From Oikopleura dioica (taxonomy: Eukaryota; Animalia; Chordata): 64,000 nt of DNA. The notes under the pieces are model-generated. The model searched no databases and was not told the DNA's origin. It was given only the letters and a program-made list of their open reading frames with translations. The stretch is taken from the NCBI GenBank assembly GCA_907165135.1, contig OU015569.1, positions 1,674,001 through 1,738,000 on the forward strand, read 5' to 3'. Of this stretch, positions 55,029 through 59,874 are shown piece by piece. Positions within the stretch are counted from its first letter, which is position 1. Every line of letters starts with the position of its first letter. A program made the position numbers and the translations under genes.

Positions 55029-56481
55029 TCAAACATAAGTCCAGTCAAATGGGGGAGCGAGATAAAGGAACGTTGTGAGCGTAGATTGAATAACTGGTAT
55101 CTGGAGCACTTCTCCTCGATCCTCGATAGGAGTAGGATCCAAACGCGCTACATTGCGATTGACTTCAGCAAGCACCTCGTGAATGTCTCGCTGGTTTGTA
55201 CTTTTCAGCTGATCAAAAACATCGCACTAAAAATAGTTTCTGATTCTCTGAAATAAAACTCCTCATACCAGGGCTGAAACGAAATAGCTTCCAGTTTTCC
55301 TGTCTCTCAGGGAAACTTGTTTTTCAATCGTCGAGAAGTGGATCAAACAATCAGCATCATACGGCCATCTAAAATTTATTTCGTAAAAACGTTCTCTTTA
55401 AGATACTCAATAGATAATACTCAACTAACTGAAATGGTTAAGACATTTCTTTATTCAGAATTAGAATTTTAGTCGTGGAGAAAATTGCTTTGAAAGAGTG
55501 CCTCAGGAACTCTCTCCTTCCCCTTTACGACGACGTGTTTATTAAAACTGATTTAGGAGGGTTTAATTTTTACCTTTTTTGTACTGTGTTTCCTTGAGCT
55601 ACAAGATGCGTCTTGCCGATTCCCTTTCCCCGGCATGCATTAACAAAGAACAGCTTCGGTTTCGCGGCCAGAGTTATGTTCGACTTTTACAGATATTAAA
55701 TTAAGATTTCATGATCTGATGGTTCAACCGTCCGCTATAATATTTGTATCTGCTCCTTAATTGGATCCACGAAGAAATTCAAATCCGTATGAGTGTCCTT
55801 CAGATAAATGATGTTATTCGCACTTCCATGGGACGAAATAGCCATGCCGAATACTTCGATATTCGACAGGTCAATCTTTTTGAAGATTTTCAGAATATCC
55901 TCCGCGACGTATTTCGAAGGATTATGATAAATACGAACTTCGAAGCCAAGGCGCACCATCGTTTTAGTTAGCCTTGCGATATCTTCCTTTGCACCATCTC
56001 TGAAATGAGGTTCAATATTACTGTCTCAACTTATCTCTGTTTTATAACTTTCAATTAAAACAAGGATCTGATAGAAGTTTAATCCAAAAGCCTAATTTAA
56101 CCTTTTATTGACCACAGTTTTAGTCCGCTTTCCAGTCTTATCATCAATCCAAACGCACGACTTATCAAAGTGCTCAATTCCAAAGATCAAGAAAATCTTT
56201 TTCGACTCCTTGACCTTTTTCCAATCGTATTCACGCTTCGTGTAAGTAAAAGTAGCACTGCTAGGCTTAATAGTCTTCGAAGAGGAAGGTGGCTGAGCAT
56301 CAGTTGTCGTATCTGTTTTTTTGCAACCGCTTTCTTGGGCTTTCTTGAAGCTGTTGCTTCTGAGAAATCCGTCGACCTCAGCTCCTTCGTCATATTCATC
56401 CTCGACTTCGGGTAGCTTTGATGGATCATAAGACTTCTCCGTGAGTTCTTTCCAAAGCTCAGCGTTCGTGTCTTCCAGCAT
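55029..56481 (-). CDS. Caspase, copy B (tandem paralog, NACRG)
   Basis: KRDGAKED, AISSHG, KPKLFFVNACRG, WPYDADCL, VSLR, GSYFV; same intron positions as copy A. Confidence 0.93.
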
Positions 56482-56592
56482 TATTTCTGAAAACGGCGAA
56501 CGATGAGTCCTCTTTGATTTCGAATAAATAGATTCTCAACTAGTAACTCTAGTGAACTTAGGAGTAGAAAGACAGAGAATTTTCTTCGAAGT

Positions 56593-57123
56593 TTAAAACT
56601 TCGAGTTCAAGAATTTGGACACAAAATCAGTCGCTTTAGGATCGTTTTGAAGGAGCTCATCGAAGGGTCGGTGCATTTGCGATTCCTGAGAATAGCCGAC
56701 AACCAACTCCTGGAAATCCATCTGGCCTTTGCCGAGGAGCAACTCGATCGCGCGAGTGTCAGAAATGTTACTGAAGAGATTGTTATTTTAAAATGGTGGC
56801 ATTTTCCTTCCAATCACCTGTTTTTGGCGAATTCGTTTTTGATAACTTGTCGGTAGACATTGACGGGAATAGAAGATTTGTTCAAGACGAGGATCTCTGG
56901 GGCGGCTCTGTAGAATGCTTTGTACAAGGTGAGGACTCGAAGACGAGAGTTGGCCTGAAAGGAGAGAGCATTAGGGTTAATGGGGTTGCGGAAGTCTTAC
57001 TCTGGCATAGTCGGCTCGAGCTTGAGTGTTCAACTTCTCGGATGGGGTCTGCTTGACGTATCCTTCGACGGAGGCGCCGGAGTTGCGAACCGCCTGGCTC
57101 CTTACGACAGCTCGAGTCAACAT
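56593..57123 (-). CDS. NDUFA6: NADH dehydrogenase 1 alpha subcomplex subunit 6 (B14, LYR family)
   Basis: RLRVLTLYKAFYRAAP...EFAKNSNISDTRAIELLLGKGQMDFQE...DFVSKF matches the B14 pattern. Confidence 0.9.
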
Positions 57124-57699
57124 TCTAGTAGTAAAAGATAGAGTTCTGCTTTTTTAGATACTTTGTAAATAACAAAAGAAAACGGCGCTTATTTTCTTAT
57201 TTTTTTGACCTATTAAATTTATAATAAATAGATACCTTCAAAATATTTGTGTTTTGGTCATTTTAAATCTTCATAAAATCAAATTTAAATATTTTCATTG
57301 CTATTTCTCTACATTTAAATCTGACCAAACGAAGAGAAACCAAGCTAAACTAGCAAATCATTTTCCCTTTAATCATTTTTACTACTTTTCCTTCTCTTCT
57401 ATAAATTTCCCTTTTTATTATTTACCCTTTTATTCAATTTTCGATATTAAAAAAGCATTGAAAGAACTTTCTTTATTTAGATTTTATTGAAAATAGAAGG
57501 AGGAAAATTGTAATTCAGCTCAGAAAAAAGGAGGAAAAAACACATCAAGAATAACCACAGATAGAAATTGTTTCGTAGGGTCATGTTTTTGGAAAAGTAA
57601 AGTAACGAGGTAGAATTATTTACAAAATCGGAAAGTAGTAAAAGTCAAGTAGAGTGCTAAAAGGTGAGAACAACTGTATAAATAAGGAGGAGTGGGTGT

Positions 57700-58336
57700 T
57701 CAGTGAGAAGTGTCGAGAAGAGGCGTTTTTGAGCGGAATCGGGAGAAGTGGGAGGCAAATGACTGCTGCACCCCTTGCGAGTGTTCACATTGATTCACTG
57801 CGCCCGACTTTCTACAATGTTTGCAGACGAGCACGCCGCAGGAGCTAGAAAATAGAGTTGAGAAAGGTCAAAGGTCGGGTCGAGCGACGTACCGGCAGTG
57901 CCAAGGGCGGCGAAACCAAATACTGGCGTGGCATTGGTGGCAGTTCTTGTGGCGCGTCTCGATGTTCTTGCGTCGGAAATTGTGCTGGTCGGTTTTGGAG
58001 AGGTAGGAAGAGTCCTCGGATTGAAAGAGGAGGAGGCAGTTGACGAAGAGGGATGACTCATCGTCCAGGTCGATATACTTGCCAGTGGTAGGCTCGATGA
58101 TGTTCACTTTCTCGAAATCAACGCCGCGCAGACGGTTGCATTTTTTCAAAGTATCTCCCACGGACACTAGAAACTAGAGTTACCGACCTAGAGCACAAGA
58201 AAAATGACTCACCATCGTCGTGGACTGCAACAGTTGTGAGACCGTTGAGTGTTAGAACTTGGAAAGTCCTCCGCGGCATGCCGAAGTTTCGTCGCTGAGT
58301 GATGTCGTAAGCTGGTTTCATTTCTGTGAGCATCAT
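57700..58336 (-). CDS. Raf-type RBD + C1-like zinc finger protein with no kinase domain
   Basis: Three exons. RBD-like RTFQVLTLNGLTTVAVHDDVSVGDTLKKCNRLRGVDFE...GKYIDLD, then HNFRRK...CHQC...HCRSCGVLVCKHC...C; stop at 57700. Confidence 0.8.
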
Positions 58337-58562
58337 TTTTTCTATGATTGATGGATTGATTGAGGATGAGTTGAGTAGTCAGAAAAATACAGTATGCGCC
58401 GATTTCAATTTTATAAATCTGAAAAGAAGAGGGGTTAAAATCTAGAATTTTTTAAGTGAGCTTAAACTTGAACATTAATAATTGAACTAGACGGGACGTT
58501 TCTTGTGCGTCTCATGTGTGGCAGTCTAACAGGTGAACAAGTCGAGAGGTTCGTCCTGAATC

Positions 58563-59440
58563 TCACTCTTCTTCTTCCTCTTCGTCCATGGTAATGTCCA
58601 TGACTTCTATCGACGTTTCCGCCTCGACTCTGCGCATCTTTTGCTCCAGCCCATGAATCGCTTGAAGAAGGACATGCACTTCTTTTCTTCTCTCGTTTAG
58701 CTTGGAATCGAGCCCTTCCTTTTCTATAAAAACGACGGTTAGAATTATTCTCTTCCTTGATTTCAGATGATTTACCGATAGTTAAAGCGTCGATGTCTTC
58801 TTTTATTTTCTCGATTTCGGCGTTGGACGTTGCTCTGTCAGGATGTTTGTTGATGATTTTGGCAAAGGCGTCGTATTCTTGCTGATTGGACTTGTATTTT
58901 CGCGCTTCTTTCAGCTCGGCTCTGAAATCGCATAAAATTTTAAGCTAGAACTGTTGAACGTACGTTGCTTTTTCTATCATTTTCGAGGCATTGGACATTT
59001 CAACTTCAACTTCTTTCTCGTTGTCAATGTATTTTTGTCGTTGGCGCTCGTTGGCCTTGGCGATCATTGTCAACTTCTTCACCTGCGAACGAAGTTGAAA
59101 ACGAAAGTACTTATGAATGGCCCTGGCAAGCTTCCTTGACCTAGGAACGGATAATTGACCTGATATTCCGCTTGATCGAGCATTTGCAAAATCTTCTGTC
59201 CAGCTGCCTGATCAGGTTCCGGACTGTTGCACCACTAAACCAAATACTCACTATTTCTTATTTACTCTCTCGCGCGAAGTTTCAGGTTTTGAAAGTTCTA
59301 GGCACGTCGAAAGGTACTTTTACGAGTCTTACCCGAAGAAAGGATTTTAATAAAAGTGTCAGCTTCCTGTCATCGCCCGCACCCTCGCCGTCAAGCAACA
59401 ATCGTGTGCGAATCACTTCATCGTCCTTAGCGGTGTTCAT
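58563..59440 (-). CDS. THOC7: THO complex subunit 7
   Basis: DDEVIRTRLLLDGEGAGDDRKLTLLLKSF, WCNS, KQHPD-like QHPDR, RRKEVHVLL. Confidence 0.95.
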
Positions 59441-59874
59441 TCTAAAATAACTAATATTGGAGAAAATCTTCATCAAAATTCATAAAAAACGAATAACTTT
59501 GTAGACTTTAAACTAAAAAGAAAATTGACCTGAGCTGCCTCGAGTTTTCCGTAAATTTGAGCTCTAAATCAGCAGCTATTTGGCAATCCAACTTTTGGAA
59601 AAAGGAAAAGACACTGCCTAATCATTGCTGATTTAATAAACTCACAGAAATGTAACCCTCAACAGCGGGGGGTAGGGATAAAATTTTCACGCGTTTCTTT
59701 CACAACGGGTGTTAAAATTATCCTCCGCAAATTTTAACCCTTGGCAGCTGGCTGGTATTTAAAGGTTATTAGGATCCGGCGAGGATCGATTTGAAGTTGC
59801 TAAAAATATCGTTTTTTTTTTCTTTTCAAGCCCAACAAATTTAACGAATTTTAAGAATTCCAGGGTAAGAAATT

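What the first reader, a model, noticed from the sequence alone, without database searches (positions are those of the whole stretch)
57700..58336. Stand-alone Raf CR1 (RBD + C1) gene with no kinase: candidate Ras decoy or adaptor
The ~180-aa spliced product aligns by eye with the contiguous RBD and cysteine-rich domain of Raf. It keeps residues matching c-Raf K84 and R89 (LKK..RLRG) and the HNF.RK C1 start, but lacks the R59/R67 equivalents. The second C1 His is replaced by Cys, giving a FYVE-like RRPWHCRSCGVLVC. The frame stops at 57700 and NDUFA6 starts 577 bp later, so there is no room for a kinase. CR1 fragments are known to act as dominant-negative Ras binders (established). A dedicated endogenous gene doing this is inference.
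Basis: partly seen in the sequence, partly recalled or inferred. Interest (0 to 1): 0.72.

Follow-up and report, generated by a model that had tools for sequence, protein, structure and literature searches.

The report
Kinase-less Raf-like Ras-binding gene, Oikopleura
The tunicate Oikopleura dioica carries a small, strongly conserved and expressed gene whose protein resembles only the Ras-binding front end of the Raf kinase, a format known in vertebrates only as a splice variant (DA-Raf) that dampens Ras signalling.

Summary
A three-exon gene on the minus strand (58336-57700) encodes 180 aa. Its product is identical to the annotated Oikopleura dioica protein CAG5094632.1 (Okinawa assembly, X-specific region).

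Full-length mRNA contigs from two relatives carry the spliced leader, an uninterrupted coding sequence, a stop and a poly(A) signal. No kinase exon exists. dN/dS is 0.05 between O. dioica lineages. About seven homologue clusters exist, all 155-186 aa, and most are known only from marine sequence surveys.

The N-terminal domain models confidently. Its best structural matches are Raf Ras-binding domains (Z 10-11, against 8.9 or less for ubiquitin). Pfam RBD scores stay below threshold. The K84, K87 and R89 equivalents are kept, and the R67 equivalent is lost.

The zinc finger has eight invariant ligands in C1 spacing, with the sixth changed from His to Cys. HMM and language-model scores lean towards FYVE instead, so its class is unsettled.

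No binding to any GTPase was tested. A preprint reports that O. dioica lacks H/K/N-, M- and R-Ras but keeps Raf and three Rap genes. The closest known analogue is DA-Raf1, a splice isoform rather than a gene of its own. I rate this a new variant of a known kind, of moderate interest.

The parts
58419..58420 (-). Predicted spliced-leader trans-splice acceptor (AG). The mature mRNA would start at 58418.
   Evidence: The cDNA contig L002 reads spliced-leader 3' end, then ATAAAAATTGAAATCGG. This aligns to the window and to the Bergen genome directly after the AG. The spliced-leader sequence was checked against PMC6883708. Placement in the window is by homology.
58337..58418 (-). 5' UTR (82 nt). 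It holds the motif AATTGAAATCGG at 58410-58399, which is complementary to the spliced leader.
58213..58336 (-). Coding exon 1 (residues 1-41 plus the first base of V42). It holds the N-terminal helix and strands beta1-beta2 of the RBD-like domain.
58167..58212 (-). Intron 1 (46 nt, GT..AG, phase 1). Its position is conserved in the Bergen lineage.
57893..58166 (-). Coding exon 2 (residues 42-133 in part). It holds the rest of the RBD-like domain, the linker and the first half of the zinc finger.
57845..57892 (-). Intron 2 (48 nt, GT..AG, phase 2). It lies inside the zinc finger between ligands C132 and C135.
57700..57844 (-). Coding exon 3 (residues 133-180). It holds the second half of the zinc finger, the conserved basic tail and the TGA stop at 57702-57700.
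   Evidence: The Bergen orthologue P0013 has the same C-terminus.
58015..58273 (-). Raf-like RBD (ubiquitin-fold) domain, residues about 22-92. The span includes intron 1.
   Evidence: AlphaFold2 pLDDT is 85-92. Raf RBDs top the Foldseek and VIA-align rankings. Pfam RBD gives E 0.0064.
57787..57984 (-). Cross-brace zinc finger, residues 103-152. The ligands are H103, C117, C120, C132, C135, C140, C143 and C152. The span includes intron 2.
   Evidence: Eight invariant ligands in alignments A3 and A4. Pfam FYVE 26.4 bits. C1 hits in relatives.
57455..57699 (-). 3' UTR, with AATAAA signals at 57488-57483 and 57477-57472. The 3' end near 57455 is approximate.
   Evidence: Sequence. The cDNA L002 of a sister lineage ends at the corresponding AATAAA.

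Best explanation
This is an intact, expressed, single-copy gene of Oikopleura dioica. It is conserved in other marine relatives, at least some of them appendicularians, because their transcripts carry the Oikopleura spliced leader. The 180-aa protein copies the layout of Raf conserved region 1 (CR1): a Raf-type Ras-binding domain, then about 11 residues later a C1-patterned, FYVE-like cross-brace zinc finger, then a short basic tail. It has no CR2 and no kinase. The most likely mechanism is inferred, not shown. The edge strand beta2 and helix alpha1 of the RBD would dock on the switch I region of a GTP-loaded Ras-family GTPase. In this animal that would probably be a Rap or an unassigned Ras-like protein. 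The zinc finger and basic residues would hold the protein on acidic membrane lipids. With no catalytic part, it would then act as a kinase-less effector. It would compete with full-length Raf and other effectors, as DA-Raf1 does in vertebrates, or it would tether something else to the active GTPase. The gene sits directly downstream of THOC7. In one relative it is on the same transcript, so it is probably the second gene of an operon that is resolved by spliced-leader trans-splicing. The confidence given covers the whole statement: the architecture alone I would put near 0.85, the GTPase-binding competitor mechanism near 0.4.
For: Gene model and protein identity. Full-length mRNAs: L002 and L003 each run spliced leader, 5' UTR, uninterrupted ORF, stop and 3' UTR, and L002 ends at an AATAAA signal. 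Purifying selection: dN/dS 0.05. All differences in a metatranscriptome contig are at third codon positions. Family: seven clusters of 155-186 aa, none longer, in an HMMER scan with no length limit and in a profile word search. RBD fold: pLDDT 85-92. Foldseek's top hit is CRaf RBD-CRD 7jhp_C (E 2.3e-6, 127 columns), followed by a run of Raf-type RBDs before any ubiquitin. VIA-align gives Z 10-11 and rmsd 1.5-2.5 over 65-81 residues for Raf RBDs, against 8.9 or less for ubiquitin. Pfam RBD gives E 0.0025-0.0064. The only ubiquitin-fold hits of the family profile in the PDB are the RGS14 RBD and the designed Raf RBD dRafX6. The two top ESM Atlas feature clusters carry RBD plus C1_1. Raf-contact equivalents: N64, K65, R67, T68 and K87 map to invariant columns, and R59, Q66, V69, K84 and R89 map to conservative ones. 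That is 5 of 10 invariant against 11 of 61 elsewhere in the domain (Fisher p 0.04). Zinc finger: eight invariant ligands with C1 spacing. UniRef names the Bergen orthologue a 'Phorbol-ester/DAG-type domain-containing protein'. Operon: contig L004 has the spliced leader at its 5' end and spans THOC7 plus this gene. The order THOC7, this gene, LYR gene, caspase is shared by the Okinawa and Bergen lineages. [quoted passage not shown]
Against: No sequence test reaches a curated threshold. Pfam RBD scores 16.8-18.1 bits against a cut-off of 25.7. FYVE scores 26.4 against 27.8. C1_1 reaches only E 0.07, and only in one relative. The structural margin of Raf RBDs over ubiquitin is only 1-2 Z units. 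The R67 equivalent is an invariant Thr, and the R59 equivalent is Gln in O. dioica. In Raf-1 both residues contribute to Ras affinity (my own knowledge). The zinc finger taken alone scores as FYVE by PDB profile, ESM features and ESM structure. Its own AlphaFold2 model is poor (pLDDT 53), and the fold search with it was not significant. A preprint reports that O. dioica lacks H/K/N-Ras, M-Ras and R-Ras. No binding, localisation or phenotype data exist. RNA reads available for the species label come from another lineage and barely cover the gene.
Confidence: 0.5

Rival explanations
1. The protein is a ubiquitin-like domain followed by a FYVE-type lipid-binding zinc finger. It would be an endosomal or membrane adaptor with no link to Ras-family GTPases, and its resemblance to Raf CR1 would be convergent or too remote to carry function.
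For: FYVE is the best Pfam hit in seven of the nine members scanned. The RUFY1 FYVE domain is the best PDB profile hit (E 3e-5). ESM Atlas features and structure for residues 94-160 return only FYVE clusters. The RBD sequence scores are below threshold. Ubiquitins lie only 1-2 Z units below Raf RBDs.
Against: FYVE alignments cover only the central six cysteines. The family has seven invariant Cys plus an invariant N-terminal His at C1 spacing. It has no conserved fourth CxxC pair, no WxxD motif and no RVC motif. The RRHHCR signature is kept only as one invariant Arg. The whole-protein searches point to Raf RBD-CRD. The most conserved surface of the N-terminal domain is the RBD's GTPase-contact strand and helix.
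Confidence: 0.25
2. The gene is the product of a Raf gene fission. It would be the detached regulatory half of the appendicularian Raf and would work in trans with a kinase-only Raf protein, recruiting or autoinhibiting it.
For: RBD followed directly by a C1-type finger is, to my knowledge, an arrangement otherwise seen only in Raf. The family is old and strongly constrained. O. dioica genomes are known for gene loss and rearrangement.
Against: The preprint lists a Raf orthologue spanning 2.47 kb in the Barcelona genome (PAR:6700456..6702922). In this compact genome that is long enough for a full-length Raf (inference). The protein here shares only 20-25% identity with Raf RBDs. This fits an old, divergent paralogue better than a recent split. 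I could not fetch the O. dioica Raf sequence, so this was not tested directly.
Confidence: 0.08
3. The gene is a decaying remnant or an annotation artefact with no function.
For: None beyond the lack of any family hit above a curated threshold.
Against: dN/dS is 0.05 at near-saturated dS. Intron positions, the stop codon and gene order are conserved across lineages. Spliced-leader-capped mRNAs are present in several transcriptomes. Homologues at 40-60% identity keep all eight zinc ligands.
Confidence: 0.01

Closest known systems
DA-Raf1/2 (mammalian A-Raf splice isoform) and zebrafish Araf-tv2
   Same: These are proteins of about 186 aa made almost only of CR1 (RBD plus cysteine-rich zinc finger), with no CR2 or kinase. 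[quoted passage not shown] Their size and domain order match the protein here.
   Different: DA-Raf is produced by alternative splicing of the Araf gene and is identical in sequence to the A-Raf N-terminus. The protein here is the only product of a dedicated gene. It shares just 20-25% identity with Raf RBDs, has Cys instead of His as sixth zinc ligand and lacks the R67 equivalent. It also lives in an animal reported to lack classical Ras and M-Ras.
Raf kinases (A-, B-, C-Raf), region CR1
   Same: The predicted RBD fold is best matched by Raf RBDs. The K84, K87 and R89 equivalents on helix alpha1 are kept, as is the N64/T68/V69 pattern on strand beta2. A zinc finger starting H-N-F-x-x-K follows after a short linker, with the same ligand spacing.
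   Different: There is no CR2 (14-3-3 site) and no CR3 kinase. Pfam RBD and C1_1 thresholds are not reached. The sixth zinc ligand is Cys. The central hairpin reads like the FYVE RRHHCR motif.
RGS12/RGS14 tandem Raf-like RBDs
   Same: These are Raf-like RBDs (PF02196) that work as non-kinase binders of Rap and Ras. The RGS14 RBD is the best PDB sequence hit of the family's N-terminal domain profile (E 0.15). RGS12 and RGS14 clusters appear among the ESM structural neighbours.
   Different: RGS12 and RGS14 are large proteins with RGS and GoLoco domains and no zinc finger after the RBD. Structural identity is 15%, against 20-25% for Raf.
FYVE domains (EEA1, Hrs, RUFY1)
   Same: The central C-x2-C ... 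R-R-x-x-H-C-x-x-C-G ... C-x2-C segment is shared, and scores are near threshold.
   Different: The WxxD and RVC motifs and the fourth Cys pair are missing. The family has an invariant N-terminal His at C1 spacing instead.

Membership tests
Raf-like Ras-binding domain (Pfam PF02196) | The sequence reaches the Pfam gathering score | tested here: not met
   P0023 scores 16.8 bits (E 0.0064) and P0013 scores 18.1 bits (E 0.0025), against a cut-off of 25.7. The other family members give no hit.
Raf-like Ras-binding domain (Pfam PF02196) | Ubiquitin-type beta-grasp fold that is closest to solved Raf RBDs | tested here: met
   AlphaFold2 pLDDT is 85-92 for residues 20-100. Raf-type RBDs dominate the top of the Foldseek list. 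VIA-align Z is 10-11. The margin over ubiquitin is 1-2 Z units.
Raf-like Ras-binding domain (Pfam PF02196) | Basic GTPase-contact residues (Raf-1 R59, R67, K84, K87, R89) | tested here: inconclusive
   K84 maps to K/R, K87 to an invariant R and R89 to R/K, so these are kept. R67 maps to an invariant T. R59 maps to Q in O. dioica and R in three relatives. Raf-1 numbering is from my own knowledge, anchored on the dRafX6 alignment.
Raf-like Ras-binding domain (Pfam PF02196) | GTP-dependent binding to a Ras-family GTPase | not testable with these tools
   No complex prediction or biochemistry is available here.
C1 domain (Pfam PF00130; Raf CRD type) | Ligand pattern H-x12-C-x2-C-xn-C-x2-C-x4-H-x2-C-x7-C | tested here: inconclusive
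   Eight invariant ligands follow H-x12(13)-C-x2-C-x11-C-x2-C-x4-C-x2-C-x8-C. The spacing fits, but the sixth ligand is Cys rather than His.
C1 domain (Pfam PF00130; Raf CRD type) | The sequence reaches the Pfam gathering score | tested here: not met
   C1_1 reaches E 0.07 in P0003 only. C1_2 reaches E 1.6e-4 to 0.045 in three relatives. P0023 itself gives no hit. UniRef names the Bergen orthologue a Phorbol-ester/DAG-type domain protein.
FYVE zinc finger (Pfam PF01363) | Eight Cys in four CxxC pairs plus the WxxD, R(R/K)HHCR and RVC motifs | tested here: not met
   The family has seven invariant Cys plus one His. There is no WxxD, no RVC and no fourth pair. Only one Arg of the basic motif is invariant.
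FYVE zinc finger (Pfam PF01363) | The sequence reaches the Pfam gathering score | tested here: not met
   The score is 26.4 bits against 27.8 for P0023, and 26.7 for P0007. This is close to threshold. ESM Atlas neighbours of the finger alone are all FYVE.
Raf kinase family | CR3 serine/threonine kinase domain on the same polypeptide | tested here: not met
   The ORF ends at residue 180. Full-length mRNAs of relatives end after the same ORF. No long relatives turned up in an HMMER scan without length limit.
DA-Raf-type intrinsic Ras antagonist | CR1-only protein produced from a Raf kinase gene by alternative splicing | tested here: not met
   This is a separate locus between THOC7 and an LYR gene. 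It has its own spliced-leader acceptor and poly(A) signal.
DA-Raf-type intrinsic Ras antagonist | Suppression of Ras-ERK signalling by competition for active Ras | not testable with these tools
   This needs cell or embryo assays.

The most novel reading that the evidence does not exclude
Appendicularians are reported to have lost H/K/N-Ras, M-Ras and R-Ras. They may keep a dedicated, anciently diverged gene of the Raf-CR1 type as a standing trans-acting regulator of the remaining Rap or Ras-like input to Raf. It would be either a constitutive buffer or decoy, or a membrane co-receptor that replaces functions of lost adaptors. That would turn a vertebrate splice-isoform trick (DA-Raf) into a separate gene and show how a rewired, Ras-less MAPK input is controlled.
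Probability: 0.25. Interest if true: 0.7.

Novelty: new variant of a known kind. Interest (0 to 1): 0.5.

Why it matters
Kinase-less CR1 proteins are established natural inhibitors of Ras-ERK signalling, but so far only as splice isoforms of A-Raf. A free-standing, strongly constrained gene with this layout would be a natural experiment on what the Raf front end does on its own. It occurs in a chordate with a stripped-down receptor-tyrosine-kinase pathway and no classical Ras. It could help identify which GTPase feeds Raf in Oikopleura. It also adds an unannotated RBD to a protein that databases currently label only as a C1 or FYVE zinc-finger protein. The zinc finger, which sits between the C1 and FYVE patterns, is a useful test case for how these two cross-brace folds relate.

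Tried and rejected
1. Pfam and PDB searches with the single exons gave nothing, because both domains are split by introns.

2. The word search with the 99-aa exon 2 ORF found only a 71-aa fragment, because of the length window. Its contig could not be fetched.

3. I did not type or join the spliced protein. The identical database entry P0023, found by cluster look-up, was used instead.

4. RNA reads: the three runs with the species label are 90-95% like the window, so they come from another cryptic lineage. They gave depth of about 1 on exon 2 only and no joints within the gene. They therefore neither confirm nor refute the introns in the Okinawa lineage.

5. The zinc finger folded alone gave pLDDT 53, and its Foldseek search was not significant. 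I draw no conclusion from it.

6. P0008, a 1101-aa repeat protein (E 7e-14 summed over seven repeats), matches only a short I-x-P-T-x-G-x-Y-I-x-L stretch. I take it as chance similarity inflated by repetition.

7. I could not obtain the O. dioica Raf protein. No tool-derived Raf sequence was available as a query, and the scan's notes hold none. The fission hypothesis therefore rests only on the 2.47-kb span given in a preprint supplement.

8. The THOC7 neighbour is conserved in Bergen and in L004, but not in the more distant contigs L005 and L006.

9. A literature search for a described kinase-less Raf paralogue gene found none.

Full report
**Organism and locus.** An earlier scan note says this genome is the Okinawan Oikopleura dioica reference. 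I confirmed this independently. The product of the gene in question is letter-for-letter the NCBI protein CAG5094632.1, 'Oidioi.mRNA.OKI2018_I69.XSR.g13728.t1', 180 aa (P0023). The short GT..AG introns of 46-48 nt are typical of this compact tunicate genome.

**Checking the observation.** On the minus strand an ATG at 58336 opens exon 1 (to 58213). A 46-nt intron (58212-58167) leads to exon 2 (58166-57893). A 48-nt intron (57892-57845) leads to exon 3, which ends with TGA at 57702-57700. Each exon peptide and both split codons match P0023. The next downstream ATG, of an LYR/NDUFA6-like gene, is at 57123, which is 577 nt after the stop. The upstream neighbour is THOC7, and the Bergen locus has the same neighbours. 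The identical database protein served as the reference for whole-protein tests.

**Is it a real gene, and does it end there?**
- The Bergen-lineage genome (L001) has the orthologue P0013 (179 aa, CBY08389.1). It has the same two intron positions and the same C-terminus and stop. Sequence similarity drops immediately beyond the stop and within the introns.
- Against the cDNA contig L002 (92% amino-acid identity), dN/dS is 0.05 with dS 0.89.
- A marine metatranscriptome contig laid on exon 2 differs at nine places, all at third codon positions.
- L002 and L003 are contigs of two public sequencing runs (L003 is 59% identical). Each begins with the last 21-22 nt of the O. dioica spliced leader, whose sequence I verified in PMC6883708.
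- Each then runs through a 5' UTR, an uninterrupted 179-codon ORF, the stop and a 3' UTR. L002 ends at an AATAAA signal.
- Two Tara transcripts (P0009, P0027) even start with the translated spliced leader.
- So mature mRNAs of this family encode only the small protein. There is no hidden kinase exon.
- By alignment, the trans-splice acceptor in the window is the AG at 58420-58419. Poly(A) signals lie at 57488-57472.
- RNA reads for the species label come from another cryptic lineage and barely map, so the window's own lineage has no direct read support.

**Family.**
- An HMMER scan of 1.84 billion representatives with exon 2 returned 11 hits. All except one spurious repeat protein are 196 aa or shorter.
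- A profile word search and cluster look-up resolved seven clusters of 155-186 aa. The O. dioica cluster holds the Okinawa, Bergen and other lineages. The six others come from marine metagenomes and metatranscriptomes.
- No Raf or other long protein was recovered.
- Two DNA metagenome contigs carry an intronless 155-aa homologue in a different gene neighbourhood.

**N-terminal domain.**
- Pfam gives sub-threshold but specific hits to the Raf-like RBD, with E 0.0064 for P0023 and 0.0025 for P0013. The scores are 16.8-18.1 bits against a cut-off of 25.7.
- The family profile finds only two ubiquitin-fold entries in the PDB. Both are Raf-like RBDs: RGS14 (E 0.15) and the designed Raf RBD dRafX6 (E 0.65).
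- An AlphaFold2 model built with seven family sequences has pLDDT 85-92 over residues 20-100, with a beta-beta-alpha-beta-beta-alpha-beta order.
- Foldseek against the PDB ranks CRaf RBD-CRD bound to HRas first (7jhp_C, E 2.3e-6, 127 aligned columns, 24% identity). Raf-type RBDs fill ranks 2 to 22, before any ubiquitin.
- VIA-align gives Z 10-11 (rmsd 1.5-2.5 over 65-81 residues, 20-25% identity) for 23 Raf-type RBD entries, against 8.9 or less for ubiquitins.
- A search of 48,161 PDB representatives that does not use Foldseek again puts the B-Raf and RAF1 RBDs on top (Z 10.3 and 9.8).
- ESM Atlas feature neighbours of the whole protein are two clusters carrying RBD plus C1_1. The score is 0.83, which counts as a lead only.
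- The margin over ubiquitin is modest. However, four partly independent lines agree on a Raf-type RBD.

**GTPase-contact residues.** I anchored the mapping on the dRafX6 alignment, with Raf-1 numbering taken from my own knowledge.
- Strand beta2 reads L-T-L-N-G-x-T-T-V-A and is almost invariant across the family.
- Helix alpha1 reads K-C-N-R-L-R-G.
- K84 maps to K/R, K87 to an invariant R and R89 to R/K, so these are kept. N64 and T68 map to invariant columns.
- R67 maps to an invariant Thr.
- R59 maps to Gln in O. dioica but to Arg in three relatives.
- Five of ten contact-equivalent positions are invariant, against 11 of 61 elsewhere in the domain (Fisher p 0.04).
- The best-conserved face is therefore the one RBDs use to bind switch I. 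This is suggestive, not proof.

**Zinc finger.**
- Across sequences only about 40% identical, exactly eight potential ligands are invariant. In P0023 they are H103, C117, C120, C132, C135, C140, C143 and C152.
- Their spacing is that of a C1 domain, with the sixth ligand changed from His to Cys. The domain starts Q-H-x-F, as C1 domains do.
- The Munc13 and PKC C1 alignments run from that His onwards.
- UniRef names the Bergen orthologue a Phorbol-ester/DAG-type domain protein.
- On the other side, the central hairpin resembles the FYVE RRHHCR motif. FYVE is the best Pfam hit (26.4 bits against 27.8). The RUFY1 FYVE domain is the best PDB hit (E 3e-5). ESM Atlas neighbours of residues 94-160 are all FYVE.
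- These FYVE alignments cover only the six central cysteines. The family lacks the WxxD and RVC motifs and a fourth Cys pair.
- The finger modelled alone was poor (pLDDT 53), and its fold search was uninformative.
- My reading is that this is a cross-brace finger whose ligand pattern favours C1 topology, but whose class is not settled.
- The residues that typical C1 domains use for diacylglycerol are absent (my own knowledge of the motif). Like the Raf and KSR fingers, it would therefore be an atypical, non-DAG type.

**Mechanism.**
- Shown: gene structure, expression as a spliced-leader-capped mRNA in relatives, strong constraint, RBD-type fold and a two-zinc-type finger.
- Inferred: the RBD face binds a GTP-loaded Ras-family GTPase, the finger and basic residues bind acidic membrane lipid, and the protein acts as a kinase-less effector or competitor.
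- The direct precedent is DA-Raf1, the N-terminal 186 residues of A-Raf produced by alternative splicing. [quoted passage not shown] Zebrafish Araf-tv2 behaves similarly (PMC4646197).
- The context here is unusual. A 2025 preprint reports that O. dioica has Raf, KSR, MEK, ERK, three Rap genes, Ral and Rheb. It reports no H/K/N-Ras, M-Ras or R-Ras (10.64898/2025.12.09.693154). The partner would therefore have to be Rap or an unassigned Ras-like protein.

**Rival readings.**
- A ubiquitin-like domain plus FYVE-type membrane adaptor unrelated to Ras remains possible (about 0.25).
- A fission of Raf into regulatory and kinase genes is unlikely, because the listed Raf locus spans 2.47 kb. I could not inspect that protein (about 0.08).
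- A pseudogene is excluded by the selection and transcript data.

**Genomic context.**
- THOC7, this gene, the LYR gene and a caspase keep the same order in the Okinawa and Bergen lineages.
- In a more distant relative, a contig that starts with 30 nt of the spliced leader runs through THOC7, a 390-nt spacer and this gene (L004).
- This is direct evidence for a polycistronic transcript. In the window the spacer from the THOC7 stop (58563) to the acceptor (58419) is about 140 nt.

**Verdict.** The functional label (Ras decoy or adaptor) is a reasonable but untested inference. The concept itself already exists as DA-Raf. What is new is a dedicated, divergent, lineage-restricted gene for it, and the RBD has gone unannotated. 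I rate it a new variant of a known kind, with interest 0.5.

Noticed in passing
window 58399-58410 (minus strand); L002:27-38; L003:29-39: Just after the spliced-leader junction, the 5' UTR carries AATTGAAATCGG. This is complementary to the spliced-leader segment CCGATTTCGATT. The mature 5' end is predicted to fold into a 12-bp hairpin joining leader and UTR (-15.1 kcal/mol, z -3.3 in L002). The 59%-identical species L003 keeps a 9-bp version through a different UTR sequence (z only -1.1). This could be a translational control element, or it could be chance.
   Followed up: partly
window 58419-59476 (minus strand); L004:1-1528; L001:4918-6656: THOC7 lies directly upstream on the same strand. 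In a relative, one spliced-leader-capped contig spans THOC7 and this gene, which indicates an operon. Cross-lineage RNA reads show the spliced leader joined at about 59443 and a 98-nt intron (59235-59332) in THOC7.
   Followed up: partly
window 57727-57762 (minus strand), residues 161-172: The C-terminal tail motif F-A-S-x-x-S-R-F-(K/R)-S-(K/R) is conserved in most family members, beyond the zinc finger. It is basic and fits an R-x-x-S site for a basophilic kinase, or a membrane-binding patch. AlphaFold2 leaves it disordered.
   Followed up: no
window 55400-59700 (read laying): The three 2026 RNA-seq runs labelled with the same species are only 90-95% identical to the window in coding exons. 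They therefore come from another cryptic O. dioica lineage. Read-based checks on this genome need runs from the Okinawa lineage.
   Followed up: partly
L005:1075-1542 and L006:2556-3023: The most divergent homologues (155 aa, Tara and other marine DNA metagenome contigs, GC 36-39%) are intronless. They sit in a different neighbourhood, with an MFS transporter upstream in L006. Their source organism is unknown.
   Followed up: partly
window 57700-58336: According to the NCBI model name (OKI2018_I69.XSR.g13728), the gene lies in the X-specific region of the Okinawa assembly. In the Barcelona genome the preprint places KSR on XSR as well.
   Followed up: no
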